This document shows positions 19,901 to 64,000 of a stretch of 64,000 nucleotides of DNA, one piece after another. The notes below the pieces were generated by a model. The model had not been told where the DNA came from, searched no databases, and saw nothing but the letters and a program-made list of their open reading frames with translations. The stretch spans positions 80,642,970 through 80,706,969 of the forward strand of contig NC_068988.1 of the NCBI RefSeq assembly GCF_001194135.2, in the 5' to 3' direction. The stretch's first letter is position 1. The number at the start of each line of letters is the position of its first letter. The translations under genes and the position numbers were made by a program. This DNA is from Octopus bimaculoides (Eukaryota).

Positions 19901-20141
19901 CAGAAAAAATATCACTATCATCACTGGGTTGAACACAATTCTTTGGGGCAGATTTTTTTTTATGGCTAGATGTCCATCCTGTCACTAACTTTCTCACCCG
20001 TTTTCATGCAAGACAATGAATATTCCCCATGAATAGACGTGTATTCACAGGAGACTGGAAATGAATGATGCTACTTGTAGGACAGTGATACTCATCATTT
20101 ACAACTATCATGATAAAGGGACGCTAACACACGTTCACCAC

Positions 20142-20175
<34 letters not shown>

Positions 20176-26100: not shown

Positions 26101-29100
26101 TAAAGTTTTGCTTTTTTTTTTTGTTTTTAAAGTTTTACATTTCTTTATATTGGACCTAGAAACATTTACAATCTTTACAGTAACTGAACTTTTAAATACC
26201 ACTAAAGATCATTAAGTATACATGTCTACATTAGGTACAAGATGTACATGTATACATAATATAACCAAAACCATAGCTGTAGATATATGGCTTTATGGTT
26301 AAAAAGTTAATTTTGCAACCACCTGGTTTCAGGTTCAGTTCATTGGGCAGCTGTCTACTACAGCCCTAGGTCAACTGAAACCATACAAGTGAATATGGTA
26401 GAGAGAGACTGAAAGAAGCCTATTGTGTGTGTGTCTCAGTGTTTGTTAACATTAGTGATCTACAAAAGTCACTTGCTACAAATGGTGTACTACTGTCAAC
26501 AAATCAACTGCACATTTTGGACCTTTGAAGACTTGTGTTCAATAAGAAGTCTCTTACATGAAAAGCAGGCATGGATTAATGATAGGAAGGGCATCCAGCT
26601 GTAAAACAATGCCTGAATAATATGTATAACCCATGCAAACATGGGAAAACAAGACATAAATGATAACTGTCATTTGAAATCAAGTATGACATGATAACAT
26701 GTATCATGCTTTCACTAATTGTTTTAGGTGCTTATATAGTCACAAACAGACATCCTTTCAGTCATTTTACGTTTAACCCAGCAGAACAACAAAGATGTGA
26801 CAGCAGAGAGAAGAGAGGGTGGCATTAAAACTCAGCTGATACTCATTTAAGTTTAGTGTACTGAAGCAATAAGTGCTTTGCCCAAGGACACATGTCTCCC
26901 AGTTCAGGAATCAGACCCATAACCTTATGATTGAGAGTCTAAGAGCCTAATCATCAGACCAGACACCACCACTGAACATAAATGGTATATATTTGTATGC
27001 ATGTCACTTCTGCTCAAGCAAATATACATACCAAATATGTACACACATGTATACATGCTATACACATATGAATAATATACTTATGTACCAGCATAGATGT
27101 GTGGTTACAAAGTTCACCTCACAATAGGTCATCAGGTCCCATCACACACTGTGGTAACTTAGACAAATGTCTTCTACTATAGCCCTGAGTTGATTTGGTA
27201 GATGGAAACACTACAGAAGCCCGTCATATATCTTGTAAAACACTTAAAATATCTATACACACAAGTGTGTATGTCCCCACATCTTTACAGTCACACTGTT
27301 TGAGTAGTAACATTTAATTTTGTCTCCCATAGCTCAGCAATATTGTCTGTTTCAATACGAGAAAACCAACGGAATAATGAGGGTGGGCTGAAAAGTTCAT
27401 AGGCTGGCTATGCAGGATTAATGACAGAGCTGTGAAATTTTGCATCCATTAATTTTAACTCCTCTTATTAATGACTGCACCGTTTCTTTCCAGCTAAACT
27501 GAACTCTGACTGTTCAAAGAAGACTTTAAAAGTAACAAGTAGCAACTACTCTTGAAAATCGACAAAATTTGGCACTGTGGGGTCACAAAGTACCTGCAGA
27601 AAAAGGCTTTAGCCCCCAAGGACATTCATGTTAACATGCTACATTAGAGGAGGACACTATAGCTTTATCAGCAGTGTAAACGTGAGCAGCTGATTTTTGG
27701 AAGGAAAAGGGGGAGTCTTGAAGATCAGCCAAGGTCTGGACCTCTGCAACCACTGAAGAAAACATTAACTGTGGTCACCACTTGGTGATGCATGACAAGT
27801 GATTGACTGTAAATCAAACAGCCAGTGCTATTAACATATGAGAGTTGGGAATATTCTGCACAATGAAATTGTCATAAGGAAGGTTTCTGCTTGGTGGATG
27901 CCACATCTTCTGATGCACATTTGAAAGTGCACCAGGCTGATCACATCATGGGAAAGTCTGACATTGTTTCAGGCAGATCCAGCTGGTTTCTTTGAATGAT
28001 TTCTAACCCAAAATGAGTGTTGGGTTCATCACTTTGAGCTAGAGACAAAGGGACATCCATGCAGTGGAAACAACCCACCTCACCTGCTCAAAAGAAAGCC
28101 AAGTTTGCTTCATTTGCAGGGTGTGTGATGGCCTTAGTATTTTGGAGATGCAAAAGGCATTGTGTTTATCGACTTCAAAAGGGTCACACCATCAATAGAG
28201 TGTACTATGCCAAATTGCTGAGGCAGTTCCAGAAAGCTATCAAGACCCAAGAAAACTGACAAAAAGAGTCTTGTTTCATCAGGACGATACTCCAGCACAC
28301 AAGTCCTTGGTTTCAATGGCTGCTGTGTATGACTGTGGCTTTGAACTGGTTGATCACTCTCCCTATTCTCCTGATTTCGCTCCATCTGACTATCATCTGT
28401 TCAACATGAAAAAACACTTAGCTGGGAACCAGTATTGCATTAATGATGATATCGTATCTATTGTTAACAGGATGAGAGCCAACAGGATGAGGCCAACAGG
28501 ATGAGAGCTTCTTCACCAATGAGATCCAAGCACTGCAACACTAATGGAATAAGTATGTGGAGTGCAAGGGGTACAATGTTGTAAAATAAACCTCATTTGG
28601 TCACATTCCATGAGTATTATGGTCACCCTATGAACTTTTCAGCCAACCTCATAAACTACCTTAATTAAAGATAAAACAACATGAAGGGCAGCAGGCCCTA
28701 CAATACTGCCTCAGTAAGTCTCATCCAACCCTTGCTAGCATAGAAAAAGTTGACGTAAAAACTACCATACTGATACAGACATACACATAATATGCACAAT
28801 AGACATGACTATATAAAAAGAAAAAATACATATATACATTTGTGAGTGCATCCTGCAAGTGTTTATGGTTTAAAACCTACTCTAGTTTATTCTAAGTCCT
28901 TTAATATCCCAAAATTTAACACTATGACAATAAGTATCAAACAGGAGTCAATACAATTGAGAAGGCCATTGAAGATAATGCCCTAGCATAATTACAATCA
29001 ACTAAATCAAACCAATTAGAAGAACAATAATACAGAAACAATATGCACAAAAATATGCACAGAATATTCTTATACAAGCTGCTGTAGCAATGAAAAAAAA

Positions 29101-37656: not shown

Positions 37657-38180
37657 NNNNNNNNNNNNNNNNNNNNNNNNNNNNNNNNNNNNNNNNNNNN
37701 NNNNNNNNNNNNNNNNNNNNNNNNNNNNNNNNNNNNNNNNNNNNNNNNNNNNNNNNNNNNNNNNNNNNNNNNNNNNNNNNNNNNNNNNNNNNNNNNNNNN
37801 NNNNNNNNNNNNNNNNNNNNNNNNNNNNNNNNNNNNNNNNNNNNNNNNNNNNNNNNNNNNNNNNNNNNNNNNNNNNNNNNNNNNNNNNNNNNNNNNNNNN
37901 NNNNNNNNNNNNNNNNNNNNNNNNNNNNNNNNNNNNNNNNNNNNNNNNNNNNNNNNNNNNNNNNNNNNNNNNNNNNNNNNNNNNNNNNNNNNNNNNNNNN
38001 NNNNNNNNNNNNNNNNNNNNNNNNNNNNNNNNNNNNNNNNNNNNNNNNNNNNNNNNNNNNNNNNNNNNNNNNNNNNNNNNNNNNNNNNNNNNNNNNNNNN
38101 NNNNNNNNNNNNNNNNNNNNNNNNNNNNNNNNNNNNNNNNNNNNNNNNNNNNNNNNNNNNNNNNNNNNNNNNNNNNNNNN
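37657..38180. other. Assembly gap (others: 4505-4831, 9770-9947, 19519-19528, 35815-35824, 41942-42222)
   Basis: Runs of N. Track ORFs crossing them are artefacts. Confidence 1.
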
Positions 38181-41100: not shown

Positions 41101-44100
41101 GTGAAACGTGACTGTTCTTTTGATGAACGGGGCTTCACTGACCTTTTTCCGAATAACTGGAAACTTGAAATGAATGCTTATATTTAGTTTTAGAGTGTGT
41201 ATGAATACATATATACGAATAGATAGATGTGTATGTATATATACATATATATTTATGTATAGTATATCGCATGTATATATTTGTTTGTATGTATAGAGAG
41301 ACGGAAAGTTTGGTACAAGAGATATGTTTTGTCTATTTTTAGCTCTTGGAGAAATCTGTAGGAACAGCCTAACTTCATATTGTGTGTGTGTGTGTGTGTG
41401 TGCATGTATGTATATATATAAATATACTTACATCAGGTACACGCTTGCGCACGCACACAATCACACACATACGCACATTACACTTGCGTGCACTAGCGCC
41501 CGTAGTTAACCTATTGAACAGAATCGAAATTATCTTGTTTGCTAAAAATTGCTATTTCTTCAGATTTGTATGTTTTAAATATCGGGGATTACGACTCTGC
41601 AAAATTAAAAAATTCTTCGAATTTTGAATTTTTTCTAATTTTCACTCTCATCGCCTCTCCGAAATTTTTCAGGATCTTTTTCTGCAAAAAAAAAAAAGAA
41701 AAACCGAAGTTCCAAATTTTTCTTTTGCCAATTTTGCTCCATTACCCTCCTTTCTGTAACTTTTTCAGTTTTGACTATTTCTCAATTTTTTTAATCATCG
41801 AAAATTACAGTTATGCAGAAATAGAATTTTCACATTCAATTTACAGTTTCATCTGGATTTTTTACATACGTGGAATGTAGGCAAAAAATTCAAATTTTGA
41901 AACAATCTTGAGGGTGAGGGGCAGTATCGTAGTCTCTAATGNNNNNNNNNNNNNNNNNNNNNNNNNNNNNNNNNNNNNNNNNNNNNNNNNNNNNNNNNNN
42001 NNNNNNNNNNNNNNNNNNNNNNNNNNNNNNNNNNNNNNNNNNNNNNNNNNNNNNNNNNNNNNNNNNNNNNNNNNNNNNNNNNNNNNNNNNNNNNNNNNNN
42101 NNNNNNNNNNNNNNNNNNNNNNNNNNNNNNNNNNNNNNNNNNNNNNNNNNNNNNNNNNNNNNNNNNNNNNNNNNNNNNNNNNNNNNNNNNNNNNNNNNNN
42201 NNNNNNNNNNNNNNNNNNNNNNACAAAAAATGTAGAAAATTACAGTAGAATAGACATATTATAATTGTGGTAACATTTAAAATCCAAGTGGGAAGAAGAA
42301 TACATAAAAATCCATCTTGACATAGCCAAGGCTAGCAGGCTAGTAATTAGTTCTAGGTAGAATTCTAACTGTCTCTGATTTTATTGTCTCTTATCTAGTG
42401 GTTATAGTATAAGGGGCAATCACTTCTAAGGAAAGGGAAGGTGTAAGCATTATACATGGATATGGTTATAAAGGTTTCTCTGGTCAGAGTGGCAACACTA
42501 TTTTAGGTTGGGGTTTTTTTACTGCTATCATAATGTTGGGGAATTAAACCTTAAGCATTTAGGTCAACAGGGCTTTTTCTTTAGTCTGAATGAAGCATCA
42601 GTATTGTTTTACATATACTAAGTATGGGAAATTTATATATATACAGTGGGACTGTACCCGGAACCATGTGGTTGGTAAGCAAGCTACTTACCACACAGCC
42701 ACTCCTGCGCCTATATATGTGTGTGTGTGTGTGTGTATTGTGGCCATCCATACATACAGGTGTGTCCTTTATGGCCATAACCTCACTCCTTCTCCCAGCT
42801 GATAGGTCTTTGTTTTGCAAGTACCAGTGCCACATAATATGCACTTCTACTGGTGCCACATTAAATCCGTTCATGCCAGTGTCACATAAAAGTGTCAGTA
42901 ACATGGTTGGCATTAGGAAAGTCTCCAGCCATAGAAACCATGCCAAAACAATTGGAGTTAAACAATCCAATCCATGCCAACATGGGGAAACAGACGCTAA
43001 ATGCTGCTGCTGCTGCTGATGATGATGATGAATTATCATCATCTTTAAACATTCATCTTCATCTTCCATGTTGGTGTGGGTTAAATGATTTGGCAGGATC
43101 TGACAGGTCAGAACTGCATCATGCTCCAGTGCCTGCTTTGACATAGTTCCTATGGTTAGATGCCTTTCCTAACGCCAATCATTTTACAGTTTGTACTGGG
43201 TGCTTTCCTTCTGGCACTAGCACTAGCAAGGGCGTTATGCTGCTTGTAAGACTAAGGTACCTTTCAACTGAGTAAGGCTGCAGTTGAGAGGAAAGCATCC
43301 TTATGCCAGGAAGTGAGAGGGTAAAGTATGGAAGAAGGGGCCAGAACAGAATAGGTTTCTTGCTATGGAAAAATTACATAACTGCTCACATTATAGAAGA
43401 GTTGGTGTGAGTAACCAGGGTGGAACTAGAAAGAGAAATAAAATAGAGATGCAGTGTCAAAGTAGACCTTCAAGCTAACTAAAAGTGATTGAGAATCAGA
43501 ACAAAAAGTGAGTAGGGTTGCAAAAGTATGTGAAGAAAGTGAGAGAGGGTTAGAGATGGGGAATGAGTGAAGGGGCAGATATAAAGAACAATGACAGAAG
43601 GATGGTTGATGATAGATAGAGAGAGAAAAGTAGGTGATGACTAGTGATTGAGTAATGAATGGTAGACAAGGGTGGAGGACTGATCAATGATGCATATGAA
43701 TTGGGGGAAGGCAATAATTGATGACTGTCAGTACAGAAGTGTGTGAAGAGCAGCAGAATAGTAATGATAATACAGTAGACTGGCGAAGATGAGAGAGTGG
43801 GAAATGATGTGTGGGTGGGCAAGCTGTATGGGGGGGGGGTTAAGGGAGAGGAAGATGTAATATGTGAGGAGAGTGAGCTGTGTGGAAGTTGAGAAGGAGA
43901 ATAGTAGTACAGAAGTATGATCAGTGTAAAATATGAGTGGAGAAGGATAATATTAAGAATTAAAGATGGGTGACAAGTGAAGTAGTGCCAAGAAGTGAGA
44001 AAAAATAACTGGTGTCACAGTTATGAGCATAATTGAGAGGTCTGAAAGAGAGATGGGTGGTAAAGGCTTGAGGAAGAAACTGAACAAGGAGCAAGTTGTG

Positions 44101-46289: not shown

Positions 46290-47060
46290 AGGGCCTCTCC
46301 CTCAGAGAAAAAGGCAGACTGTATGAGGCCTGTATACGAACAGCTATGCTACGTGGCAGTGAAATGTGGACTGTGACTACCGAGGATGTGTGAAGGCTTG
46401 AAATAAATGAAGTCAGTATGCTCCACTGGATGGGTAATGTCAGCGTGCATATATAACAGAGTGTAAGTGATTTGAGAGAAAAACTGGGTATATGTAGCAT
46501 CAGATGTAGTGTGCAAGAGAGAAGACCGCACAAGAACGGTCATGTAATGTGTATGAATGAAGACAGTTGCATCAAGAGGTGCTGGTCTCTAATTTTGGAG
46601 GGAACATGTGGAAGGGGTAGATCCAGGAAGACATGGGTAAAGTGCTGAGAAAAGATCTTCAAATGTTGGACCTCATAGAGGGCATGACGGGACTGAGACT
46701 CCTGGTGGTTTGCTGTGCTTGAAAAGACACGTCAAGCTATATAAAAGCGTGGTTGTCATTGAAAAGAGGCATGACACCTGCATCCCTCTCCAGCTGAATG
46801 TTCCTAATCTTGTGGGCTCGTGGGTGCTGGTGCCACATAAAAAAGCACCCAAACTAGTGCCACGTAAATACACCCATGCTGGTGCTGCATTAAAGTACCC
46901 AGTACACTCTGTAAAGTGGTTGGCATTAGGAAGGGCATCCAGCTATAGAAACCAGGCCAAAACAGACATGGAGCCTGGGCAGCTCTTCAGTTGGTCAGCT
47001 CCTATCAAACCATCCAACCCATGCCAGCATAGAAAAGAGACATTAAATGATGATGATGAG
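46290..47060 (+). mobile_element. RTE LINE 3' fragment (decayed)
   Basis: KGRLYEAC...MLRGSE...GHVMCM...GRGR, then the shared 3'UTR and (GAT)n tail. Confidence 0.85.
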
Positions 47061-50000: not shown

Positions 50001-50512
50001 CTCTTTTATGATATTTCCATCATTGTTCAATCACTGGTAGTGCTAATTGGTGGCTCACCATAAACAAAATATGGGGTGACAGATTAATCTAAGAATAGAG
50101 CTTTGCTATGAAATTTTGCTGGGTACAGACATGTTGGTGTGGTTCAGAAGTTCATTTTGCAAATATGTGATTTTGAGTTTTACCCCATTACATGGCACCT
50201 TGGGCAAGTGCCTTCTGTCATAGCCCCAGGGTTGTCAAAACCTTGTAAGTGAAATTTGGTGGATGGAAATTGTATGGGAGTCTGTTAGAGAGACTGTTCC
50301 TGTTGTTGGGGTTATTATTCATCATCACGATTTTAGCACTCATACATGCATCAGTATTTATCAAAGTGTATTTTTTAGGGATGGATGCCCTTCTTGTTGT
50401 CAACCCTTGCCTGTTTCCAAGCAAGGTAATATTTCCCTATGGCCAGATATGTTTACACAGAATATTAGAAATGAATGACACTGTTTGTATGATAGTGATA
50501 TTTGTAGTGAAC

Positions 50513-50677
50513 ATTGGCGGTCAAGCAGGAAAGCAAAACGAAAAAGGGATTTAACAAGAGTAAACCTTCTAGAAACTTCTCAAACATTCTAGAAGCTTCC
50601 GGTTGATGTGAAAGTCAGGGACCTCTGGTTCATCACTTATATAAAGGAACACATTTCTAAATTCGCGCCACTCATTG
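50513..50677 (+). promoter_or_regulatory. Heat-shock-type Pol II promoter: inverted CCAAT (50513-50517), HSE array (50561-50600), TATATAAA (50638-50645), initiator-like CCACTCATT (50668-50676)
   Basis: tAAAc-cTTCt-aGAAa-cTTCt-cAAAc-aTTCt-aGAAg-cTTCc: 8 alternating pentamers in register, 6 perfect. TATA-to-initiator distance is 30-34 nt. Confidence 0.85.
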
Positions 50678-50934
50678 CCTGTTGGTTTTTCTTTCACAAC
50701 GTAAGCTGCTTGGAATATTGCTATTGTTGATACTAATTGTTTTATGTGTATTGTGGTTTCCCATTGTTTATTATTCCATTGGAAATAATTTTGTCTTAAT
50801 TTGTATCCTTCCTCTTGGGGGAGGGTAGAAAAATTAATATTTTGTTTAAAAATTTTTTTTGAACTGCATTCCCTTGTGAAACTTATTTCTTGTATGTAAT
50901 TTTTTGCACTTGCTTGTACAATTTTGTTTACAAA

Positions 50935-52535
50935 ATGGCTGAACAACAACCAAAGAAGTTAAACTTTGCTGCCGTTGTTGGCGGACCAGTGAAAATTGAA
51001 TTGTGTAAGGAAGAAATACAACAGTATTTCAGCATGATAACCGAAAAAGACGGAGACAACGCTATAATGCCTCTAAATGAGATGATTATAAAGACGAAAG
51101 AAACAAACTATTATATACAAATCATTCAACAATGAGAAAAAAAGTTCGAACATCTAGAGGAATCAACTATCGAAAAATGCCTCGGGCCAGTGTTAAAGGA
51201 GATTAAATACATGGCAAGAAGTTGCAGGTTCACTAAAATTGAAGCACGGTTCGAGTCGGTTGAGAAGGCCAGGGACTTCTCGACTCGAACCGTGCAAAGC
51301 AGGAATATTCTGCTTCTGTCCTTGTATTTGGGCAGAAGAACCTCCTGGATCAAAATTAAAAATATACCGCCAAAGGTAGAGGCAGTGTGGATAGCAGCTA
51401 CCATTCTCTTCAGCTGGGAGGAGAAGATAAACATCATCCAGATCACCAGAGATGCCCTGCAAAACTGGCGGGGTCAAACTCTGGAGATCCTGGCTCAGGC
51501 TTCTTTTGAGGACTTAGAAAACCTCCCTGAGACCATTCACATCTGGGAAGAGACGGTCTTGACAGTCAATGTGGAGGGAAGAAGACCACATTGCTTTAAA
51601 TGTAGTAAGTAGGGACATGTAAGACAGAAATGCCTGCAAAATAAGGATAAAGAAGAGGAGAACAAAGATGAAGTGGCACCCTCAGCCAAGGAGGCTGTTA
51701 CCCAGAGGGCAACTGCCTCCACCAATGTAAAAGAAACGCCAGCACCTCCAGCCAAGGAGGCTGTTACACAGAGGGTGTCGGCAAGCACCAAAAATTTAGA
51801 ACCAGCGCCCACAGCCAAAGAGGTTATTACTCAAAAGATGTCAGTGACTACCAATGCATCCCCCACCTGCCAAGAAGGCAGTTACAAGAGTGGAGGCCAA
51901 GGCCATCAACAAAGAGGTGGAGACGCCCCACCCACCAAGGATGTGGTTACACAGAGGGTAAAAATATAGAGGAGGAGATGCCCCCGCTAAGGAGGTGGTT
52001 ACACAGAGAGCGCCTACCTCCTCTAAAACAAATGCAGTGGCACCCCCAGCCATGGAGGCTGCTAAGAGGGCGTCCGCTGTGGACAAACTAACCATGACAC
52101 TGTCGGAAGAGGAAATGGAATTCCAGGTGGTGTCACGCAAATGTACAAAAAAAAATGGAGTCGCCACAAAAAAGTGATTAGAAAGATTGAGAAATCACAA
52201 TAATCCCCAACGAAGGACAAAATGGGTTTGAGATGGGTACAATTATCAAATAAGGAAGAAATTGTGGTAGCAGCATATAAAAAACACGATAAATACCTGG
52301 ATAGAGTTATTAAGCTGCACCATATAACACAATTAATAATAATGTAAATATAGTAAAGATGCTGAGAGAACTCTTTTTAGAGTTAAAAGAGAGACAAAGG
52401 AAAGACATTGTGGGAGTGAGGGATCTTCTTAAAATATTCAACCTGCCGATGGAACCATTTTTAGATGAGAAGGAAGAGGAGGAGGGGATGATCCTAGTGG
52501 TACTAAGGACTACCCAACTAGAAAAAACCAAATGA
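50935..52535 (+). pseudogene. LINE ORF1 (disrupted): RRM-like region, CCHC zinc knuckle, Pro/Ala/Thr repeat linker
   Basis: Starts MAEQQPKKLNFAAVVGG. Contains IKIKNIPP and CFKCSK*GHVRQKC (CX2CX4HX4C). In-frame stops at 51133 and 51610, frameshifts after about 51860. 3' end approximate. Confidence 0.8.
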
Positions 52536-52581
52536 GCAAGGTAAGCTCTGAATTTTTCTTCCTTTTTCACCTTAATATGAC

Positions 52582-55569
52582 ATGGCTGCACTACGTATTG
52601 GCTCTTTGAATGTGCGTGGCTTGGGATCGAAGAGGAAGCAGACCTGTTTCCTCGACGACCTCAGGACACACAGAATAGATGTGATGGTTGCTACAGAAAC
52701 CAAGTTGGACAAGCTACAGGCTTTCTCACCTCTCCTGAACAGCTATGAGAAAATCATGTCTCCTAGCCGAACCAGAGGGGGAGGAGGGGTCATATTTCTG
52801 ATCCAGAAAATCTTGGCTCTACAGATTCGTACAATCTTTGTGGACCCAGAAGGCGAGTCAGTCGTTCTGGCTCTAACTTTCAGAGGTAGGGCCTTCAGGT
52901 TGGTTGGCATTTACGTGCCTAATGCAACAGGCAAACAGAATGAGTTCTACCAACATCTGGAGAATTTCCTAGTGACATCGAAGACTTTATCTGTGTAAGG
53001 TGACTTTAATGCTATTCTTGATGCACGCATGGATAGCGTTGGCTCAAACAATAGGAAATGTGACTCACACCCCGTTGATCTGCTGAAGTGATTTAGGCTG
53101 GCAGATCAATTCAGACTTGATAATCTGAATGTGCCAATGTGGACGTGGACAAATCATGATGGATCAATCAGGTCTTATATACATAGGATCTTAGTTAATG
53201 CTGAAGATAAGTCTAGTGTTAGTTGTCCACAGTTTACCTATGTACCCTACACAGATCACAAATTAGTGATGTGTAGGGTGCATATAGACAAGGATCTGGC
53301 TACTGGAAGTTGAACAAGTCCCTATTGGATTGTGAAGCTTACCCTTGCCAGATTAAAGTGTTAGTTATGAGAACACTAACTGGCTCGCTCGGATGAAACC
53401 CATCATGGCGTGGATGCTACGATTAGGTCTGTGGTTAATGAACAAGGACAGAAGATCGAAGGACAGGAAGAGATGAGCAAGGCCTTTCATGAGCATTTTG
53501 CTGCGTTGTTCGGGAGGGGTGGGACGTTGGACCATGGAGATACCATATGAGATTTCCTGGCCGGTGGCCCACATCTTTTGGTGTGTGACAATGAGCACTG
53601 TGAAGGGCCGATCACAGCCAAGAAGGTTATAGAGGTGCTTTCCAAGTGCCCCGGGGACAAGTTGCTGGGATTGGATGGTCTACCTTACGAATTTTATAAG
53701 TGTATGCCAGACTTGTTCGGAAACATGCTGGCCAGTGTTTATGTAAATTGACAGCTCCACCCATTTCACTCCCAAATCTGTGAACCAAGGAGTTGTGACA
53801 CGCATCAGGAAAGACCTGAGCAAGAGGGATAACGTAAGTAATTTTAGGCCCATAACTCTGCTAAACACAAAGTTAAAGATTTTGGCCAAGGTATTAGCCA
53901 AGAGAATGAGAATTGTTGAAGGTGACCTGGTGGGAGAAGCGCAGACATGTGCCATCCCAGGAAGGACAATATTCGACAACCTTCATCTCATACGCTACAC
54001 CATAGAGTGGGTGGGTAAAGTTCCTGACAAAGGTGGGGCACTGGTGAATTTAGACCAATCTAAGGCATCAGTATCTGGAGGCAGTCCTCGAGGCGGTCGG
54101 ATTGGGCCCGACTTTCCAAGGCTGGATCAAAGCTTTGTATTGTAACATCAAATCTGTTGTCCGGGTGAATGGGTTCTTCTTGAACGCTCGGTTTGCCAGG
54201 ACTGCCCCTTGTCCCTGCACCTGCATATGCTGGCTCTCGAGCCACTACTGCGGAGACTGGGGACGTTGGGGGGGTAGAACCGTGTGATCTATCTTATGGT
54301 AGAAGTGTAACGGCATATACGGATGATGTTACCATCATTGTGTCTGATGAAGGACAGCTAACTCTTGTAGAAGACGCCATCAAAGGATATGAAGCGGTGG
54401 CAGGGGCAGAAATTAACCAGGAAAAATCAGTCGGCTTGCAACTCAGCACCTGGCATGACATGTCGATGCCTCTTGATAGCATCATCAGATGTTGGATGGA
54501 GGGCCTGGTTAAGCTGCTCAGGGTCTGGTTTGCATCAGATTACACAGGTGTTTATTGCATCTGTGATAACCTACCACCTAACCATCGTGCCTTGCCCCAG
54601 TTTATGACTGAACAAGCTGGAAAGGATCCTTTTCCGCTTTTTGTGGAAGGGGGAACCACCATTTGTGAGGTGCTCCATTTGTTGTCAGAAACCATTAAAG
54701 GGTGGACTAGGGATGCCTTGGCTGATGATGCGCAAATGTGTGTTGAGGCTGAGACATCTCCAGTGCTACCTGAATGGTGAGCAGGTGTGGTCACCGCATG
54801 CCAAGCAACTTTTTCCACATGGACCAGGCAGACTTAGGCACAAGGATCAGGCAGAAGCCTAAGATGGGGGAATAGCAGAGGGAGTGCAGACAAGCACTCA
54901 ATCTGTTCTCCCGAGTGAGTAGTGCCGGCAGTGAGGTTACCACTGTGGACTTTTATAGAGGGTTGGTAGAGTGTAAGTTTGACAACGTCCTGGAGAAAAC
55001 TCTGGGCTTTGACAACAAACAACTAACCAGCCTGTTTGCAAGGACATTCAGGTAGAGGTACCTGGATAATTAACAGAAATCCTTGGCTTGGTTGTGCTAT
55101 CGTTTGGCTTTACCAGTTCGGGAGAGGTTGTCCAGACACAGTTATAACGCCTCCCCCCACATGTCCGAGGTGCAGGCACATCAGTGAAACTGTTGCGCAC
55201 ACCTTTGTACATTGCGGAGAGTTGAGGGGGTTGGTGACCTATGTCGAACAACTGATGTTGGATGGGGAAAGAGTACAGCTTTCAACTGAATTCATAGTTA
55301 AGATCGCACCACCTCCCTCCTTTAACAAGGAAAGGAAGGCATCCTTTTTCTGCGTAGTAGCCATACTGAAAGAGACAGTGTGGTGAATAAGAGCAAACGG
55401 GATTGAGACAGGTCACTTCATCTCCGGACAGGGGTTGGAAAGTTGGTTCAACTTCCACCTCATGAGGAAGATCTGTCTGGAGAGAAAGTACCTGCCTCAT
55501 AGTGTGTATGAGAAAAGATGGAAAAATGTAGTAAGACAGTTGCATATGCATGGGGCCATGCTTGTGTAG
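52582..55569 (+). pseudogene. LINE ORF2 (disrupted): APE endonuclease, reverse transcriptase, C-terminal Cys/His finger
   Basis: EN: GSLNVRGL, ETK, GDFN, TDHKLV. RT: NFRPITLLN, GRTIFDN, LDQSKA, YTDDV (54316-54330). C-terminal CPRC...ETVAHTFVHC. Many stops and frameshifts. Confidence 0.92.
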
Positions 55570-56211
55570 CCGGTCAATGAAGAAAAAGGAGGAAAACAAT
55601 CTCTCTCGACCAAATATTAAAGAAAAGAATGAAGTTTCGAAACTGGCAGGTTGGAATAGAGCCTGGAGGGAAAGTTATATAAAATTCAATAGTTTTAATT
55701 ATACATTAATTAAAATTTTTAAACCATAACGTTTTTATCATCCTGATCCTCATATTGTAATCACAACAGTATGGTCCCCTCTCCCCTGTAAGACTGTCCA
55801 TTGTTTGTCCCTGACCCCTCGTTGTTATATCTATATATGCCATTATAGGTAAATAAAGAAATCATTCATTGCCTGTTGATTCTTCGACATGCATACGTTC
55901 ACCTCACTTACTTGGAGACGTAATTGCAAAAAAGAATATGTTCATGTAATGTTACAAGATTTCCTTCAATTAACTTTATATGTTAATGCATTACCTCCAA
56001 TAATAAATATGTTATGACTTATTACGAACATCTCGCGAATTCCTGTTTTCTTATTACGTACAAGATGGTGACCCCCTCTTTCTTTCATGCTTATTATATT
56101 ATAGGATGTCATTTAATCGACCCATTTTCACTATATACTCATTTACAACTTTCACATTGTCAAGACATGGGGACACAAACATGCACATATTTACACACAC
56201 ATACTCACATG

Positions 56212-56243
<32 letters not shown>

Positions 56244-58653
56244 TGCATGTATGTGATGGGCTTCTATCAGTTTTCTTCCACTAAACCCACTCACAAGGCT
56301 TTGGTTAATCCACATCTAGAGTAGATGACACTTGCCTTGCAAAGGTTACAGGTGCTGTCCTTCTCCAATTGAATAATTACAAAAGGGATAATAGCATAGG
56401 AAAAATATGTAATAAAGCATAATTTATTTGGGAACATTGTGTTTCATTGAATAATATTACATTCTATTGTTTCTAACTAAATACTATTAACACTGAGACT
56501 GCTAATTAATGGCCAAAATATTAAAGTATCTCAAACGCAAAATTTAGCCGATAAATAAATAGATTTCAACTTAGATCGCCCACTCTGTTTTCTGGAGGGC
56601 GGCCGAATGTGTCATTATTGAAGCTAAACAAGATAACGTATCTGATTTGAAAAGAGTCTACTAATGTATTTAGGTACTCACTCCACCTGTTAGAAATGAC
56701 AACCAATCATACATTATCCTTCTAACTAATGAAAGGTCACACCAGACGTAGTCCTACATACGCCTGAAAAGACACTTGCGCTGATAAGAGACGCTTCATG
56801 ATTGTTTTAGCGAATTTCAATTGCAATTGTTCCACAGAAATGACGTCAGCATTATGGCTTACTTCAAGAATTAAAACAAAGAAAGAAAAAAAAATATTAG
56901 GTTAATTTGTTCGGACGAAAAGAAAATCTCACAGAACAAAGGTCTTTATTTTATGGCGTGAACCCATTTTTGGAAATGAATCGCAATGGCTTAGATAAAT
57001 ATTTCCAATTGTAACTGTTTTGTCAACATTTTGCCCAAGAACATCGGACATGGAAATATGAAATTCACAACCTATTGAGATCGAGTCATAAAGGAAATCT
57101 GAAGTACTCTATATTAAAATAAGTATTTTAAACCAATGAAAACGGGTGTTTAGTTGGCTATTTCGTTGGTCAGAGACATTCCAGGATTCACGATCAAGTA
57201 AAATTATAACCTATAAAGTATTCTGTAGTTCAGAATAGTTAATCATTTTCTACTTCCGGTTTTCTATTTTATGTCCTCGAACTTTGATAGATAACCATTG
57301 GAGGTCATTTTAGATAGATGTAAACAATATATAACTACCTGATATAGACAGTAAGTACTTATGTATTTTTCTGGAATTTATGAAATATCTGATACTTTAA
57401 CAACAGCGTAATTTTCCTCTGAGAGGTTTCCATCTTTTTTGGCAGTTTACCGTCCTTGACATGGTTACCTTGACAACGAGTAATGTTCGAAACGATACAC
57501 CTCTCCATCACTTCAACTCTCATGTGCTTCTTTCAGTGGATTCTATTTTATATAATTATCTTTTTGTTATTGTATTTATTTCTATATAGGTAACTTTGTT
57601 TTGTTTAATTCTATTAACATATACAAATAGTAGGTTTATGTTAGTGGAAAATAAAATCAAAAGCGTGAAGGAAACGATAATGTATGAAGAAATCGCTATA
57701 ATTCACGTTATACACATATGTATGTTTTATAACGTCTAATGTACATATACACACACACATGTATACATATGTGTGCGTGTTTGAATGTGGGAACATGGTG
57801 AGAATAAAGTTGATACTCCTACATGACTTCGGAATGTTGTCTCTGATACATTTAATTATTTTATATTCTGCTCTATTTCTTACTGCGTGTTTGTTCTCTC
57901 CACAGGAATCTGTCCTGCTCTTTCTTTCTTCCTTCATTTCTTTTTTCCTTTTTGTCTTCGATAGGTGACACTTGTTGATGTCTTGTAAAATTTGATTTTA
58001 AACAAATCTTAACATTACGTGACATATATATACACACACACACATTACGTGATATATATATGTGTGTGTGTGTGTGCGTGTATACACACACACACATAAA
58101 AGGTACAAAACAGAATATAGTGTTAGATTACTTATTTCATATGTATTCTTTTGTCAGAATATATCATGTAGTTATACATTAGCGTATAGCCTCATTTTTA
58201 GTGTGGTGAAATTTGGACTGTTTCATACATCTCCGCATCTTTTTGTAAGTGGGGGACGAAACGATAGAGTGCACTTTCTCTCAAATGTTACCCTCACATT
58301 CCGGCGCTCATCACCAAAATAAAATCATTTATGTGTGTTACAATTTACACATGATATAGATCCAAAAGGCTCATTTAACTTGAAACACTAACATTCGGTA
58401 GAGATAAAAGGAAAAGTCGACCGCATTGAAACGTGATTGAATTTAAAACTCTTGGGATATAGATTTAAATACTACCAGACTTTGATCGGCTTTCTGTTTC
58501 AGATTTTAAAATATATTAATAACAAATGTATTTTTGGTAATTCTCTAAATGATTTCAGTGACGGCTCTGAAATATCACAAGAAAATATCACAAGAAAACT
58601 TCAATAAATAACTTCTTGCTTCATTGTTGTATTTTGAATATAACAGGGTTTTA

Positions 58654-58850
58654 GGGCGGCGAACTGGCAGAATCGTCAGCCTTTACGTTCTGAGTTCAAA
58701 TTCCACCGAAGTCGACTTTGCTTTCATCCTTCCAGGGTCGATTAAATAAGTACCAGTTACGCATTGGGGTCGATGTAATCGACTTAATCCCATTGTCTGT
58801 CCTTATTTGCCCCCTCTATGTTTAGCCCTTTCTGGGCAATGAAGAAATAA
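58654..58850 (+). mobile_element. tRNA-derived SINE with Meta-like central domain, head partly deleted
   Basis: ggcggcgaactggcagaatcg...gttcaaattccaccgaagtcgactttgctttcatccttccagggtcgattaaataagtaccagtt. Copies at 61813-62018 (-), 17290-17420 (-), 37510-37656 (-) and 40395-40570 (-). Confidence 0.75.
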
Positions 58851-61800
58851 ATATAACAGGATTTTTATTTCTCTACTGTGCTCGAGTTTCATGTATTATC
58901 ATTTAACGAATGATTTAAAATATTTATTTACTTTTTAACTATATGCAGGCGTGGTTAAGAATCTGGCTTTCCAGCCATATAGTCTTGGGGTCAGTCTCAC
59001 TGCGTGACACCTTGGAGAGGTGCAACCAAAGCCTTGTATGTGGATATATCTATGTGTGCGTGTCTTTGGCTTTTGTTTGCCCTCCACTACCGCGTGAAAC
59101 CAATGCTGGTTTGTTTACATCCCCGTAACTTAGCCGTTCAGCAGGACAGACTTACAAAATACGTATTGGGATCGATTTTCTCTATTATACCCCTCAAGGT
59201 GGAGTCCCCTCATGACTGCAGTCCAATGACTAAAATAAGTAAATGGTAAAAGATATTGTTTGTAGTAATTTAAATGAAATGCTACTTTTTTTCCCAAACC
59301 ATCTGTGACTTTCATTTTCCATGAATTTTGTTTTCGTTTGCCGACTAAAAGGACAATTAAGAGTCATAATTATTCAAGAACACCTGCCTCGTTAATCTCA
59401 TCCATCTCAGAAGTTACTTCAGAGATCATAAGTAGAGCACCTCTTCCTCCAGACCGACTTTAGATTGCTCTTGTGGTAGCATACCATACATCTCAGTTTG
59501 AAGACAGTGTCCTGTCTAGTTGGCAAATTTGTTTTGTTTATTGAAATGTCTCAGGCTTAAATTATAAGAAGGAAAAAGTAAAAATGTTAAAATAAACAAG
59601 GAGAGTCCTAACTCCTGTTATGCACAACTGAAATACAAAGTAACAAACTTATTCATTTCTTAGTTTAGTCTAAATCCAACACTATGTTTTTACCAGAGGC
59701 CCAGTGTGTGTGTGATTTAGTTATGTTGTAATAGCACTCACAAATCACAAATTAATAGGTATTGTAGTTAAAAGACATTTGACTTATTTCTAGATTCCAG
59801 GATTAAAAATGACTTATCTCTTTGATTATATATGGTTTTCCTACCTATGCTTGCCCTGTTTGTTTGAAGTTTAAAATCTTATTGGAGAAAAAAAGATACA
59901 GATAGCACATAAAGAAAATTAGATAATAATTTTTCATTCAAGCACCTATACCTATGGTATCAGTTTGAGCCAAAGAAATTATGGTACACCTATCTTATTA
60001 TATGTTACATTACATGGTTACTATACTTAGTTAACTCTAAAGCCATCTACATTCATGTCCAGAAAATATGCCATATGGACAATGATAAAGCATGAAGACC
60101 TGTTGAGGCAAGTGAAATCAAAATCAAAATCGCTGACGTGGCCAATGACAGTACTGCCTGGTTGACACTCATGCCAGTGGAACATTAAAAGCACCATCCG
60201 AGCGTGATCGTTGCCAGGGCCGCTGATTGGCTCCTGTGCAGTGGCATGTAAAAAGCACCATTCAAGTGTGATCGTTGCCAATGTCGCCTTACTGGTACAT
60301 GTGCCTGTGGCACGTGAAAAACAACATTTGCCAGTGCTGCCGGACTGGCTCCCATGCAGGTAGCACATAAAAAACATATTTTGAGTGTGGTCATTGCCAG
60401 AATCACCTGATTGGCCCTCATGCTGGTGGCATGTAAAAGCACTAACTACACTCTCGGAGTGGTTGGCGTTACGAAGGGTATCCAACTGTAGAAACATTGC
60501 GAGATCAGATTGGAGCCTGGTGCAGCCTTCTGGCTCACCAGTCCTCAGTCAAACCGTCCAACCCATGCCAGCATGGAAAGCAGACATTAAACGATGATGA
60601 TGATGTAAAAAAAAAAAAGTGATAAAAGGTTTTGTAAAAGTGTTGAATAGGCAAGTCTTTATTCAACATCAAACATTAAAAAAACTTGTTGAGATCATTT
60701 AAAATGAAATTTCTTACCATAAATTTTCCTGCAACATAAATGTTTACAGCAAAATTTCCTATAACCATTTACATTGTTTAATGATAGGCATAGTAGACTA
60801 GATTCCCATTAGAATCCAGCTTTATGAAAGCCATATTGGTGTTCATCAATAAGAGATAGAGAGAGAGAGAGAGAGAAAAATTTGGTGTTGGAGAGTGTCA
60901 TTAGTTGCTGTTTTCATTCCCTTTCAGATTCTGGAAACTAATTCATAGGATGATGGTTAGCAGAGCCAGATCAGGGTATAATCCTGTAGTGAGAGAGAGT
61001 GTGGGGAGGGATTAAAGAGTTTGGTGAGCATAGGGGTTAGTCATGAGAATATTCTTTGATGGTAATAGAAGAATCATTGTAGGGGCCAGTTGACTTTGAT
61101 GGTTTGAGAAAACCAGAGGTACTTTTGTACTTGGCATGTATGGATGATGGTGAGTCAGATGAGTAGAATATGATAGATTTGGTAGAGGTTTACTTAGTTT
61201 TGCAGTATGGAGTTGGATAGTAAGTGGGTGGTAAAGGTGGGGTTTGTCTCTGTGGAAGTACTACAATCAGAACCATCATGGTTTAAGAAATTGAGGAGAG
61301 GAAGATTCCTCAAAGCTGGTAGGGAACCTTTTGGCAAAGAACCAAACTGATCAGTTGCAGTTTAGTTGGCAGAGGTACTTGAGAGCTGTTTAATGTACAG
61401 AAGTGTCCATTATAGTTCAGCTATTGGTCTTACAAGAGTTGTGGTGATGGGTAGATGCTGTCCATTTCATGAAGGAAGACAAGATACTTGCTTAAGGTTC
61501 CATGCAGTGAGACTGAACCCAGAATGATGTGGTTGGAAAGCAAACTTCTTACCATACAACCATGCCTAATTTGCATTTTTTATGTTCACTACATTAGATG
61601 TAAACCCTAACTTGACTATTATTTTCCATTTCTTCAGTGATTCATTCTTCTTAGATATGCTAATTTTCACACTTACTGTACATTGATTGATAATTCACTT
61701 ATAATTCATACCGTTTTGAGGAGATCTAATATGTTCTAATCCTGTTCTGAGAAGATCTAATATGACCAAAGCATGTCTGCTATTGTTTTTCTGAAATAAT

Positions 61801-62865
61801 TGAAACAATATGGGTTTCATATTTTGGCACAAGGCCAGCAAGCTCAGAGGAGGGAGCAAGTCAATTATATCAACCCAGTACTCAACTGGTACTTATTTTA
61901 TCGACCTGAAAGGATGAAAGGCAAAGTCGACCTCAGCAGAATTTGAACTCAGAACATAGCGGCAGACGAAATACCGCTAAGCATTTCGCCCGGCGTGCTA
62001 ACGATTCTGCCAGCTCGCATAGCACCTTAGTTAAGTGACTTCTACTATAGCCTCAAGTCTATTAATGTCTGGAATGAACTTTGGTAGAAAGAAACACTAT
62101 AGAAGAAGTCCATCGCATGTGTGTGTGTTATGCATGCATGTGTGTGTGTGTATCTGAGAGAGAGAGACAGACAGACAGACAGAAAGAGTTTAGATTTACA
62201 TTTATGCTGCTTAAAACTATGACAACCCCTCTGCTCACCTACTGAAACAAGTGGATTGAGTACATTGAGTACATAATTGAGTACATTGAGTACATAATTA
62301 GTGCTGTTATTTAGCCACAGGTCAGTTTTAACGCATTTCCAGTTTCCATTGTTGAAATTTCACTCCTAAGATTTTGGTCAGCTTGGAAGACAGCATCAAG
62401 CACTTATCTAAATGGTTGCAAAATGAACTTGTTAACCAAAGAACCATCCCTTCTACACTCATGTATACATTACATTAGTGTATATTAACAAACGCACAAG
62501 AAAACTTGTCTTAATAGTGATATTTGTTGACTCTAATATTCGGTGGTAAACAACATTTGCTTTAACAAACAATACAAATAACTGAATTTGAAGAATCACA
62601 AGACATGCTAGCATGGGAAAAATGGTAGATAGAATATGTATAAATGTAATAATCTACAATATATATATTTTTTTAATTATTTAATATTTCTTAATCATTT
62701 GTACATTTGAAGAAAACATATCAGTGCATCCATATATAAAAAGTTTTGCTGTTTTTTCACCTTTCTGTAAAACAACAGAGTTCCTGTGGATGTTATTTGG
62801 CTTGATAACTGCTTTAGGATTTCAGCTCTGATAACAAGAACAAATTCCTAGCACTATCTCAGGTT

Positions 62866-62962
62866 TCAGTAATATAATTCAGCTTCCTGTGATGAAGATA
62901 CTTCTAGGTTAGAAATAGTTTGATCTAATGGTGTACTAACTGGGGTGTGGCTGGGTTTGCTT
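62866..62962 (-). CDS. Candidate terminal coding exon of an unidentified neighbouring gene (SKPSHTPVSTPLDQTISNLEVSSSQEAELYY*)
   Basis: ttatttctccttgtttttaag| acceptor, 97 nt (phase 2) open to TGA, unique non-repeat sequence, AT-rich UTR-like DNA downstream. No homology recognised. Confidence 0.4.
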
Positions 62963-63965
62963 CTTAAAAACAAGGAGAAATAAGTTATACAATTAAACAA
63001 TACATGTAATTAAGAGCCAAATTGAAGAAGCCTCTTTGCCAGTGGTGCAAAAGCTTTATAGTTAGCATCAGTGGGGTGAATTACAGGTACTTAGGAACAT
63101 TTGGGGATCACATCAGTGGTATGTAGACAATAATAAATCTTAAATTTTACAGATTCATTAGTAATTAAAATTCAATTATTGTTTGCTTTAAACAGATTTT
63201 TCCGTATGGACTTTTCAAAGATCTTGTCAGTAGGCAATTTCAGATTTGAATCATCATCAGCATCAGCATCATCATTATCATCAATGTCATTGTTATAATG
63301 TCCACCTTTCCATGCTGGCATGAGTTGAATGGGATTTATTGAGACAGATTTCCTATGATTGAATGCCCCTTTATCGCAAACCCTCATCTGTTTCCAAAAA
63401 TATTCCCCATGACTGGACATGTTTCTGTAGAAGATTGCAAACAAAGGAAACCATCTATATGACAGTGACACTTGTTTACAACTCTCATGCATTTCAACAA
63501 CAGGAGACACCAACTCACACATAGACACATGAATGTATATATATATATTCATGGGTTTGTTTGTTTCTTTTTTATGAAATCCACTCACAAGGCTTTGGTC
63601 AAGCTAGGGATATAATAGAAAATACTTCCTTAAGGGGCTATACAATGAGGTTGAACCCAGAACCAACTGGTTGGAAAGCAAGATTTTTAACCACATAGCC
63701 ATGCCTGAATGCAAGTGAAATTTTGCCTGTGAGTAAAATGATTCCCCGTCTCCCTGTTAACAATGAGTTTATTACATACAGTACTCAGGTGCACTACATG
63801 GTCACTTGATCTGCTACAAATAACTTCCAAATCTTCTTCAAATCACCATCTTTTTTTAAAAAAAGAGGACATATTACGTAATGAAGTTTAAGATAAAACT
63901 GTGTCTGAAAAGATGTGGATGGCTATTGTTAGAATATCATTTATGTGTGTATGTATGTATATATG

Positions 63966-64000
<35 letters not shown>

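What the first reader, a model, noticed from the sequence alone, without database searches (positions are those of the whole stretch)
50513..50677. Exceptionally long, intact heat-shock element array with full core promoter and no heat-shock gene nearby
Seen: taaaccttctagaaacttct-caaacattctagaagcttcc, a 20-bp duplication (16/20) giving 8 contiguous alternating pentamers, 6 perfect. It sits ~40 nt upstream of TATATAAA, with an inverted CCAAT further up. Established: three or more contiguous nGAAn units bind HSF1 trimers, and long arrays bind several trimers cooperatively, as at Drosophila hsp83. No hsp coding sequence is recognisable downstream in this window. The motifs remain intact while the adjacent LINE ORFs carry many lesions. 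Inference: an orphan or TE-borne HSF1 promoter that may still be active or under selection.
Basis: partly seen in the sequence, partly recalled or inferred. Interest (0 to 1): 0.78.

Follow-up and report, generated by a model that had tools for sequence, protein, structure and literature searches.

The report
Heat-shock promoter carried by a transposon
The long heat-shock-factor binding array is real and sits in a complete promoter, but the promoter arrived inside a small cut-and-paste transposon that landed in a SINE and was later split by a LINE, which explains why no heat-shock gene follows it.

Summary
At 50561-50600 there are 8 in-register nGAAn/nTTCn pentamers, 6 of them perfect; no dinucleotide shuffle out of 100 matched this. 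TATATAAA lies 37 nt downstream, with an Inr-like site about 30 nt after it. No HSP70, HSP90, sHSP or DNAJ coding sequence occurs anywhere in the window.

The context changes the interpretation. The SINE-like repeat that ends at 50504 resumes at 56134, and the joined flanks align without a gap to other copies. The block 50505-56133 is therefore an insertion. It has terminal inverted repeats (TAGTGAACATTGG, and TAGTGAAAATGGG on the reverse strand) and an 8-bp target duplication, which are hAT-like hallmarks.

Inside the block, a dead L1/Tx1-like LINE (50692-55862) has its own 23-nt target duplication. That duplication starts at the predicted transcription start. The LINE therefore landed at about +20 of the promoter, in sense orientation, and cannot carry the array itself.

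Without the LINE, the carrier is a 435-bp non-coding element containing TIR, HSEs, TATA, Inr and AATAAA. The promoter is therefore TE-borne, but by a DNA transposon and not by the LINE.

The intact motifs do not show selection: the neutral chance that all 18 core bases survive is about 0.3. Only one copy could be examined, and activity is untested. Interest is moderate to low.

The parts
50340..50504 (+). Left half of a SINE-like interspersed repeat, interrupted at 50504
   Evidence: It is 70-75% identical to copies at 12551-12682(-), 16094-16178, 19956-20090, 22239-22356(-) and 63318-63529.
50497..50504 (+). Left copy of the 8-bp target-site duplication of element X (GATATTTG)
   Evidence: Semi-global alignment of both flanks to SINE copies c22, c20 and c63 gives an overlap of exactly 8 nt. 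The two copies now match at only 4/8.
50505..50517 (+). Left terminal inverted repeat of element X (TAGTGAACATTGG). It begins with the hAT-type YARNG motif and contains the inverted CCAAT at 50513-50517.
   Evidence: The first 7 nt are a perfect inverse match to 56121-56133, with 12/16 overall. Only 3 of 3000 random position pairs reach this, even with +/-8 nt slack on each side.
50561..50600 (.). HSE array of 8 in-register pentamers. It contains two perfect trimeric HSEs (50566-50580 and 50586-50600), each preceded by an nAAAn unit.
   Evidence: 6 of 8 units are perfect, matched by 0 of 100 shuffles.
50638..50645 (+). TATA box (TATATAAA)
   Evidence: Read directly from the sequence. It lies 37 nt downstream of the array.
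50668..50677 (+). Inr-like sequence CCACTCATTG. The predicted transcription start is near 50670-50674.
   Evidence: It lies 30-36 nt after the first T of the TATA box. The start site is inferred from standard TATA-to-Inr spacing and was not measured.
50669..50691 (+). Left copy of the LINE's target-site duplication (CACTCATTGCCTGTTGGTTTTTC)
   Evidence: It matches 55863-55885 at 20/23, with 13 nt exact (family D5). An exact run of at least 13 nt occurs in 22 of 2000 shuffles of the two junction zones.
50692..55862 (+). Degenerate L1/Tx1-like non-LTR retrotransposon, in the same orientation as the promoter. Its parts are a 5'UTR (50692-50934), ORF1 with a CCHC knuckle (50935 to about 52177), ORF2 with APE, RT and zf-RVT domains (52582 to about 55386), and a 3'UTR with AATAAA at 55852-55857.
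   Evidence: Pfam hits: Exo_endo_phos E = 2.5e-11, RVT_1 E = 3.6e-5, zf-RVT E = 0.009. The closest proteins are 60-63% identical and include an Octopus bimaculoides protein. Stops and frameshifts are listed.
55863..55885 (+). Right copy of the LINE's target-site duplication (CATTCATTGCCTGTTGATTCTTC)
   Evidence: family D5. It directly follows AAATAAAGAAAT at the LINE's 3' end.
55886..56120 (+). Remaining interior of element X. It is non-coding, has a candidate 5' splice site GAC|GTAATT at 55918/55919, and carries AATAAA at 56002-56007.
   Evidence: Pfam found no family, and the six-frame peptides found no protein homologue.
56121..56133 (-). Right terminal inverted repeat of element X (reverse complement TAGTGAAAATGGG)
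56134..56141 (+). Right copy of the 8-bp target-site duplication of X (TATACTCA)
56134..56310 (+). Right half of the same SINE-like repeat, with a (TATG)n microsatellite at 56209-56255
   Evidence: It is collinear with c22 (22239-22128), c20 and c63. Joining 50440-50504 to 56142-56205 aligns across the junction without a gap.

Best explanation
The array is the upstream activating part of a compact, canonical heat-shock-type RNA polymerase II promoter. Two trimeric HSEs lie in one 10-bp phase, followed by a TATA box 37 nt on and an Inr about 30 nt after that.

The promoter is cargo of a 435-bp non-coding element, X, bounded by terminal inverted repeats. X has the hallmarks of a non-autonomous hAT-like DNA transposon: TIRs that start TAGTG and an 8-bp target duplication. 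X inserted into a SINE-like repeat. Later an L1/Tx1-like LINE inserted in sense orientation about 20 nt downstream of X's start site and has since decayed.

The expected mechanism is as follows. On proteotoxic stress, HSF trimers bind the two nTTCnnGAAnnTTCn blocks cooperatively and recruit or release Pol II at the TATA/Inr. Transcripts would once have run through X's short leader towards its AATAAA. Now they would read into the dead LINE.

The most economical origin is that X is an internal-deletion derivative that kept the promoter/5'UTR end and the poly(A) end of a larger element. Alternatively, X captured a host hsp promoter.

Shown: the motifs, the nested insertion order (SINE, then X, then LINE), and the lack of any chaperone gene in the window.

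Inferred: the hAT assignment, the start site, HSF binding, heat induction and the deletion-derivative origin.
For: - The array is non-random, with TATA and Inr in promoter order and spacing.
- The block 50505-56133 is an insertion. Three other SINE copies are contiguous across the break, the flanks overlap by exactly 8 nt of SINE sequence, and the joined flanks align without a gap.
- The block's termini form an inverted repeat: 7 nt perfect and 12/16 overall, starting TAGTG. Only 3 of 3000 random pairs do as well.
- The LINE has its own 23-nt target duplication, which is preceded on the 3' side by AATAAA.
- The LINE is confirmed by Pfam and by octopus homologues.
- No HSP gene, Pfam family or Rfam family lies downstream or anywhere else in the window.
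- hAT families are annotated in Octopus vulgaris (PMC13282606).
- DNA-transposon-borne functional HSEs are established in Caenorhabditis Helitrons (PMC6927752).
Against: - Only one copy of X could be examined. No second copy exists in the window or in the 20.7-kb O. bimaculoides locus, so X is not shown to be a repeat family.
- The TIR is short, and the extended subterminal similarity is not significant (60 of 1000 shuffles reach it).
- The two 8-bp target-duplication copies now match at only 4/8. The duplication rests on alignment to diverged SINE copies.
- The inferred target octamer does not fit the weak hAT nTnnnnAn preference.
- No transposase partner is known.
- The 13-nt exact core of the LINE duplication has a chance probability of about 1% (2.8% among random pairs taken from the window), which is not negligible.
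- No binding or expression data exist.
Confidence: 0.55

Rival explanations
1. X is not a transposon. It is a fragment of a host heat-shock gene promoter plus leader that was pasted into a break in the SINE, as filler DNA or by template switching or ectopic repair. On this reading the terminal inverted match is fortuitous.
For: Only one copy was seen. The TIR is short, and the longer alignment is not significant. The promoter layout is exactly that of a chaperone gene.
Against: A terminal inverted match of this quality at the independently defined junctions occurs in 3 of 3000 random pairs. An 8-nt duplication of the target is recovered with three SINE copies. Filler insertions do not usually produce a clean target duplication together with TIRs.
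Confidence: 0.17
2. The promoter drives a real host gene. The TE-derived promoter has been exapted, exon 1 ends at the GAC|GTAATT donor at 55918/55919, and the coding exons lie beyond position 64000.
For: A plausible splice donor follows the leader. The 8 kb of downstream sequence available is short for an octopus-sized intron. Caenorhabditis Helitron HSEs do drive nearby host genes (PMC6927752).
Against: The promoter-bearing unit ends 248 bp after the LINE, where the SINE resumes. A 5.2-kb LINE with poly(A) signals sits in sense orientation within the leader. No coding exon of any Pfam family was found in 55880-63888, and no HSP was found anywhere.
Confidence: 0.12
3. The HSE/TATA region is the LINE's own 5' promoter. 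This is the LINE-borne version of the first reader's idea.
For: The promoter and LINE are adjacent and in the same orientation. ORF1 starts 265 nt after the predicted start site.
Against: The 23-nt direct repeat places the LINE's 5' end at 50692, downstream of the TATA and Inr. A retrotransposon can copy only what is transcribed, and the HSE and TATA lie upstream of the start they specify. The SINE break and the TIRs bound a larger unit that also includes 248 bp after the LINE's 3' end.
Confidence: 0.04
4. The motifs are a chance cluster in AT-rich DNA and have no regulatory meaning.
For: One other perfect 3-unit HSE (23910) lies inside a mariner remnant and is clearly a chance occurrence.
Against: None of 100 shuffles gives 6 of 8 perfect units. 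In addition, the array has a TATA and an Inr at canonical spacing and orientation.
Confidence: 0.04

Closest known systems
Helitron-acquired HSEs in Caenorhabditis (Garrigues et al. 2019, eLife, PMC6927752)
   Same: A DNA transposon carries clustered HSF-binding sites into places without chaperone genes. The authors suggest the HSEs originally served the transposon's own promoter.
   Different: That case involves rolling-circle Helitrons, with no TIRs and no target duplication, and thousands of copies with ChIP and expression evidence. Here there is a single TIR-bounded, hAT-like copy in a cephalopod. It carries a full HSE-TATA-Inr promoter, not just HSE clusters, and has no functional data.
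ONSEN (ATCOPIA78) LTR of Arabidopsis
   Same: A mobile element has a promoter containing HSEs, so that heat activates it and can make neighbouring sequence heat-responsive (cited in PMC6927752).
   Different: ONSEN is an LTR retrotransposon whose HSEs lie in U3 and are copied through the LTR mechanism. No second LTR-like copy exists here, and the ends are short TIRs with an 8-bp duplication.
Transposable-element insertions in Drosophila heat-shock gene promoters (Walser et al. 2006, PMC1592238; Haney and Feder 2009, PMC2793543)
   Same: A TE lands within the proximal promoter or leader of an HSE-driven unit. Those papers attribute this to constitutively accessible chromatin. The LINE here landed about 20 nt after the predicted start.
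   Different: The Drosophila targets are resident hsp genes, and the invaders are mostly P elements upstream of the start. Here the target is itself a transposon-borne promoter with no gene, and the invader is a LINE.
Canonical hsp70/hsp83-type promoters
   Same: They have contiguous inverted nGAAn units that can hold two HSF trimers, 40-100 nt upstream of a TATA box and Inr (established knowledge).
   Different: No chaperone coding sequence follows, and the unit is only 435 bp long.
Non-autonomous hAT elements (Ds-type internal-deletion derivatives)
   Same: They have short TIRs beginning YARNG, an 8-bp target duplication, no ORF, and a retained promoter-proximal end and poly(A)-proximal end.
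   Different: No autonomous partner or sibling copies were found, the TIR is imperfect (11/13), and a heat-shock promoter is not a described feature of hAT elements as far as I know.

Membership tests
HSF-responsive (heat-shock) promoter | At least three contiguous, alternately inverted nGAAn units | tested here: met
   Two perfect 3-unit blocks lie within an 8-unit in-register array at 50561-50600, matched by 0 of 100 shuffles.
HSF-responsive (heat-shock) promoter | HSEs placed upstream of a core promoter (TATA and/or Inr) in the same orientation | tested here: met
   TATATAAA lies 37 nt downstream, and CCACTCATTG lies about 30 nt after the TATA.
HSF-responsive (heat-shock) promoter | HSF binding and heat-induced transcription | not testable with these tools
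   This needs ChIP or CUT&RUN, EMSA, a reporter assay or nascent RNA.
Heat-shock protein gene locus | A chaperone coding sequence downstream of the promoter | tested here: not met
   Pfam found nothing in 55880-63888 on the + strand. tblastn with HSP70, HSP90, sHSP and DNAJ found nothing in the whole window. The promoter unit ends at 56133.
hAT-superfamily non-autonomous DNA transposon | 8-bp target-site duplication | tested here: met
   Both flanks cover the same 8 nt of three SINE copies, and the joined flanks align without a gap. The two copies have since diverged to 4/8.
hAT-superfamily non-autonomous DNA transposon | Short terminal inverted repeats beginning 5'-YARNG | tested here: met
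   The repeats are TAGTGAACATTGG and the reverse complement TAGTGAAAATGGG: 7 nt perfect and 12/16 overall. Only 3 of 3000 random pairs match this.
hAT-superfamily non-autonomous DNA transposon | Multiple genomic copies and/or an autonomous partner encoding a hAT transposase | tested here: inconclusive
   No other copy exists in the 84 kb available, and the six-frame peptides found no protein hit. No octopus genome could be searched with these tools.
Non-LTR retrotransposon (L1/Tx1-like LINE), for 50692-55862 | ORF2 with an APE endonuclease and reverse transcriptase, plus ORF1 | tested here: met
   Pfam found Exo_endo_phos, RVT_1 and zf-RVT. ORF1 has a CCHC knuckle, and octopus homologues were found.
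Non-LTR retrotransposon (L1/Tx1-like LINE), for 50692-55862 | Variable-length target duplication flanking an end that carries a poly(A) signal | tested here: met
   The duplication is 20/23 with 13 nt exact, and AATAAA lies at 55852-55857.
LINE-borne promoter (HSE array as part of the LINE) | The promoter lies inside the element's transcribed and duplicated body | tested here: not met
   The HSE and TATA lie upstream of the left target duplication and of the start site they specify.
LTR or solo LTR carrying HSEs (ONSEN-like) | A second LTR copy, or TG...CA termini with a 4-6 bp duplication | tested here: not met
   No second copy exists in the window. The termini are TAGTG...CACTA with an 8-bp duplication.

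The most novel reading that the evidence does not exclude
X is one copy of an octopod family of hAT-like DNA transposons whose own promoter is a canonical heat-shock promoter. Transposase expression would then be stress-induced, and deletion derivatives would scatter ready-made HSF-responsive promoters through cephalopod genomes. This would be an animal TIR-transposon counterpart of Caenorhabditis Helitron HSEs and plant ONSEN.
Probability: 0.2. Interest if true: 0.65.

Novelty: new member of a known kind. Interest (0 to 1): 0.35.

Why it matters
If X belongs to a family, it would be a mollusc example of a mobile element that carries a complete stress-inducible promoter. That bears on how heat-shock regulons are rewired by transposons. 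It also bears on whether transposition in TE-rich cephalopod genomes is coupled to thermal stress. The locus additionally shows a LINE landing about 20 nt after a heat-shock-type start site, which fits the Drosophila finding that such promoters are insertion targets. As it stands, this is one decayed copy in intergenic, repeat-dense DNA with no evidence of activity, so its weight is modest.

Tried and rejected
- **Close LINE copies.** I looked for close copies of the LINE to compare 5' ends. The best APE and ORF1 homologues are only 60-63% identical. Their loci are short Logan contigs or a truncated O. bimaculoides copy whose 5' region falls in an assembly gap. This was uninformative.
- **Other copies of X.** blastn with word size 7 and nhmmer against the window plus L001 found none. 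A weak 33-nt hit at 35390 is a lone TTCTAGAA dyad. A protein search with all six-frame peptides of X found nothing. That result is negative but weak, because such short ORFs are rarely called as genes.
- **Longer TIR.** An extended subterminal inverted repeat is not significant (60 of 1000 shuffles). Only the terminal 13-16 nt are claimed.
- **Downstream gene.** Pfam on open stretches of 55880-63888, tblastn with chaperone queries on both strands, Rfam and tRNA search all found nothing.
- **Metagenome scan.** The scan for the HSE architecture returned 20 eukaryote-like contigs. They share only the motif, not X, and contain no chaperone genes by tblastn.
- **Earlier hypothesis, abandoned.** My first idea was a resident hsp gene promoter hit by a LINE, with the coding sequence beyond the window. 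I downgraded it once the SINE was found to continue at 56134.
- **CACTA superfamily.** I considered and rejected it. The termini read TAGTG...CACTA, not CACTA...TAGTG, and the duplication is 8 bp, not 3 bp.

Full report
**Observation.**
Positions 50561-50600 read TAAAC CTTCT AGAAA CTTCT CAAAC ATTCT AGAAG CTTCC. These are eight alternating pentamers in one register: six perfect nTTCn/nGAAn units and two nAAAn units. An array with 6 of 8 perfect units occurs once in the window and in none of 100 dinucleotide-preserving shuffles. Perfect three-unit HSEs number three in the window against 0.82 expected, and two of them make up this array. TATATAAA is at 50638-50645, 37 nt after the array. CCACTCATTG follows at 50668-50677, 30-36 nt after the first T of the TATA, which is where an initiator is expected. 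ATTGG is at 50513-50517. The description is therefore accurate.

Two details need correction. The two 20-mers are identical at all 12 core positions but at only 4 of the 8 free positions. The 16/20 identity is thus what two independent HSEs would give, and a duplication is not demonstrated. If they were a duplication, finding all four differences at free positions would have a probability of 0.014. That would indicate constraint on the cores at some time in the past. The array is also not exceptional. A scan of metagenome contigs for TTCTAGAAnnTTCTnAAAnnTTCTAGAAnnTTC returned 20 eukaryote-like contigs, several with longer 10-bp-phased arrays.

**What lies downstream.**
From 50935 onwards there is a degenerate non-LTR retrotransposon on the + strand.
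- ORF1 has a CCHC knuckle.
- ORF2 has an Exo_endo_phos endonuclease (E = 2.5e-11), RVT_1 and zf-RVT.
- The closest proteins are 60-63% identical. One is annotated in Octopus bimaculoides and the others come from Logan assemblies, so the window comes from an octopus-like cephalopod genome.
- The element is dead. The ORF1 frame has 6 stops, the endonuclease domain has 3, and the longest open stretch in ORF2 is 198 codons.

A 23-nt direct repeat flanks the element: 50669-50691 CACTCATTGCCTGTTGGTTTTTC and 55863-55885 CATTCATTGCCTGTTGATTCTTC. The two copies match at 20/23, with 13 nt exact. The right copy directly follows AAATAAAGAAAT, which contains an AATAAA signal. An exact run of at least 13 nt between the two junction zones occurs in 22 of 2000 shuffles.

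I read this repeat as the LINE's target-site duplication, so the LINE body is 50692-55862. The duplication begins at the predicted start site. The LINE therefore landed about 20 nt into the transcribed leader, in sense orientation. The HSE and TATA lie upstream of the start they specify, so no retrotransposed RNA could carry them. This argues against a LINE-borne promoter independently of the repeat.

**The decisive context.**
The 140 bp just upstream of the promoter (about 50357-50504) belongs to a SINE-like repeat with at least seven copies in the window. In the copy at 22128-22356 (- strand), the sequence matching 50382-50505 is directly followed by the sequence matching 56142-56202 and 56256-56306. 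The copies at 19956-20216 and 63318-63599 show the same collinearity.
- Semi-global alignment of each flank to three copies shows that both flanks cover the same 8 nt of the SINE.
- Joining 50440-50504 to 56142-56205 gives a sequence that aligns across the junction without a gap to two copies.

The whole block 50505-56133 is therefore an insertion into a SINE, with an 8-bp target duplication: GATATTTG on the left and TATACTCA on the right. Both copies have decayed from a GAYAYTYR-type SINE octamer.

The ends of the block are inverted repeats: TAGTGAACATTGGCGG on the left, and TAGTGAAAATGGGTCG as the reverse complement of the right end. They match perfectly for 7 nt and at 12/16 overall. With +/-8 nt of slack on both sides, only 3 of 3000 random position pairs in the window do as well, and none do if the 8-nt offset is also required. 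TIRs beginning YARNG combined with an 8-bp duplication are the hallmarks of hAT elements (established knowledge). hAT families are annotated in Octopus vulgaris (PMC13282606).

**The carrier element.**
Removing the LINE and one copy of its duplication leaves a 435-bp non-coding element, X. Its layout is:
- TIR at positions 1-13, which contains the 'inverted CCAAT';
- HSE array at 57-96;
- TATA at 134-141;
- predicted start at about 166;
- a leader with a possible splice donor;
- AATAAA about 130 nt from the right end;
- the right TIR.

This is the layout expected of an internal-deletion derivative that kept the promoter end and the poly(A) end of a larger element. A captured host promoter would look similar.

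I could not decide between these origins. No second copy of X exists in the window or in the 20.7-kb O. bimaculoides locus. The six-frame peptides of X find no protein. No tool here searches an octopus genome by DNA.

**Why there is no heat-shock gene.**
The promoter came as mobile cargo. The unit ends 248 bp after the LINE, where the SINE resumes. Consistent with that:
- no Pfam family is found in any + strand open stretch of 55880-63888;
- no Rfam family or tRNA is present.

The only host gene recognised in the window is a glycogenin-like GT8 gene on the - strand at about 17-18.6 kb.

**Selection and activity.**
The LINE's duplication differs at 3 of 23 positions, or about 6.5% per copy. At that rate 18 core bases all survive with probability of about 0.30 (0.08 at twice the rate). 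A 5-kb ORF region, by contrast, is certain to collect stops. The two nAAAn units could themselves be decayed GAA. Intactness is therefore not evidence of selection. Whether the promoter still fires cannot be read from sequence.

**Mechanism proposed.**
HSF trimers would bind the two nTTCnnGAAnnTTCn blocks, which lie in phase and are bridged by a degenerate unit. That arrangement favours cooperative occupancy. The bound trimers would activate Pol II at the TATA/Inr, and transcripts would now read into the sense-oriented dead LINE. This follows from established HSE grammar and is not tested here. The LINE's landing about 20 nt after a heat-shock-type start resembles the Drosophila finding that hsp promoters attract TE insertions (PMC1592238, PMC2793543). 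It hints that X's promoter was accessible in the germ line when the LINE arrived, but this is inference.

**Comparison and novelty.**
In function, the closest known cases are Helitron-acquired HSEs in Caenorhabditis (PMC6927752) and the ONSEN LTR. X is a member of neither family, because it has TIRs and an 8-bp duplication. As a hAT-like element it meets the two structural criteria I could test. It remains untested for copy number and for a transposase partner.

I rate it a new member of a known kind, namely a TE-borne HSF promoter. It rests on one decayed copy. Confidence in the full nested-insertion reading with a hAT-like carrier is 0.55. Interest is 0.35. The score would rise if genome-wide searches show a family with conserved HSEs.

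Noticed in passing
window 16911-18591 (- strand): Exons of a glycogenin-like glycosyltransferase family 8 gene (Pfam Glyco_transf_8, E = 1e-18). This is the only host gene recognised in the window.
   Followed up: partly
window about 23650-28500 (+ strand): A degenerate mariner-type transposase remnant (Pfam Transposase_1, E = 2e-9). The window's only other perfect three-unit HSE (23910 TGAAAATTCATGAAC) lies inside its coding remnant and looks like chance.
   Followed up: partly
window 12551-12682, 16094-16290, 19956-20216, 22128-22356, 26345-26448, 63318-63599; L001 5127-5174, 17967-18016, 18685-18749: A SINE-like repeat of about 270 bp is present in at least 7 copies in 64 kb and also in the O. 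bimaculoides locus. Copies are 67-88% identical. ARAGORN finds no tRNA-like head.
   Followed up: partly
window 9760-10221(-), 11647-11946(+), 22848-23171(+), 46457-46645(+): Several fragments encode the ...[10 protein letters not shown]... C-terminal motif typical of RTE-like LINE tails. Pfam found no family for the one copy I scanned (the 10869-11946 segments), so the class is assigned by eye.
   Followed up: no
window 51676-52089: The C-terminal part of LINE ORF1 contains six copies of a repeat of about 63 nt (consensus peptide APPAKEAVTQR...), 60-80% identical to one another.
   Followed up: no
L006 and L010 (metagenome contigs ERZ1034377 and ERZ1034383), around the HSE match: A TTCTAGAA-phased HSE array is followed by TATAAATAGG. 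In L006, 287 nt further on, there is an ORF resembling the RNase H end of a copia-type polyprotein. This may be another retroelement-associated HSE promoter in an unidentified eukaryote.
   Followed up: no
window 4505-4831, 9770-9947, 19519-19528, 35815-35824, 37657-38180, 41942-42222: Runs of N mark assembly gaps, so the window is draft-quality sequence. None lies within 8 kb of the finding.
   Followed up: yes
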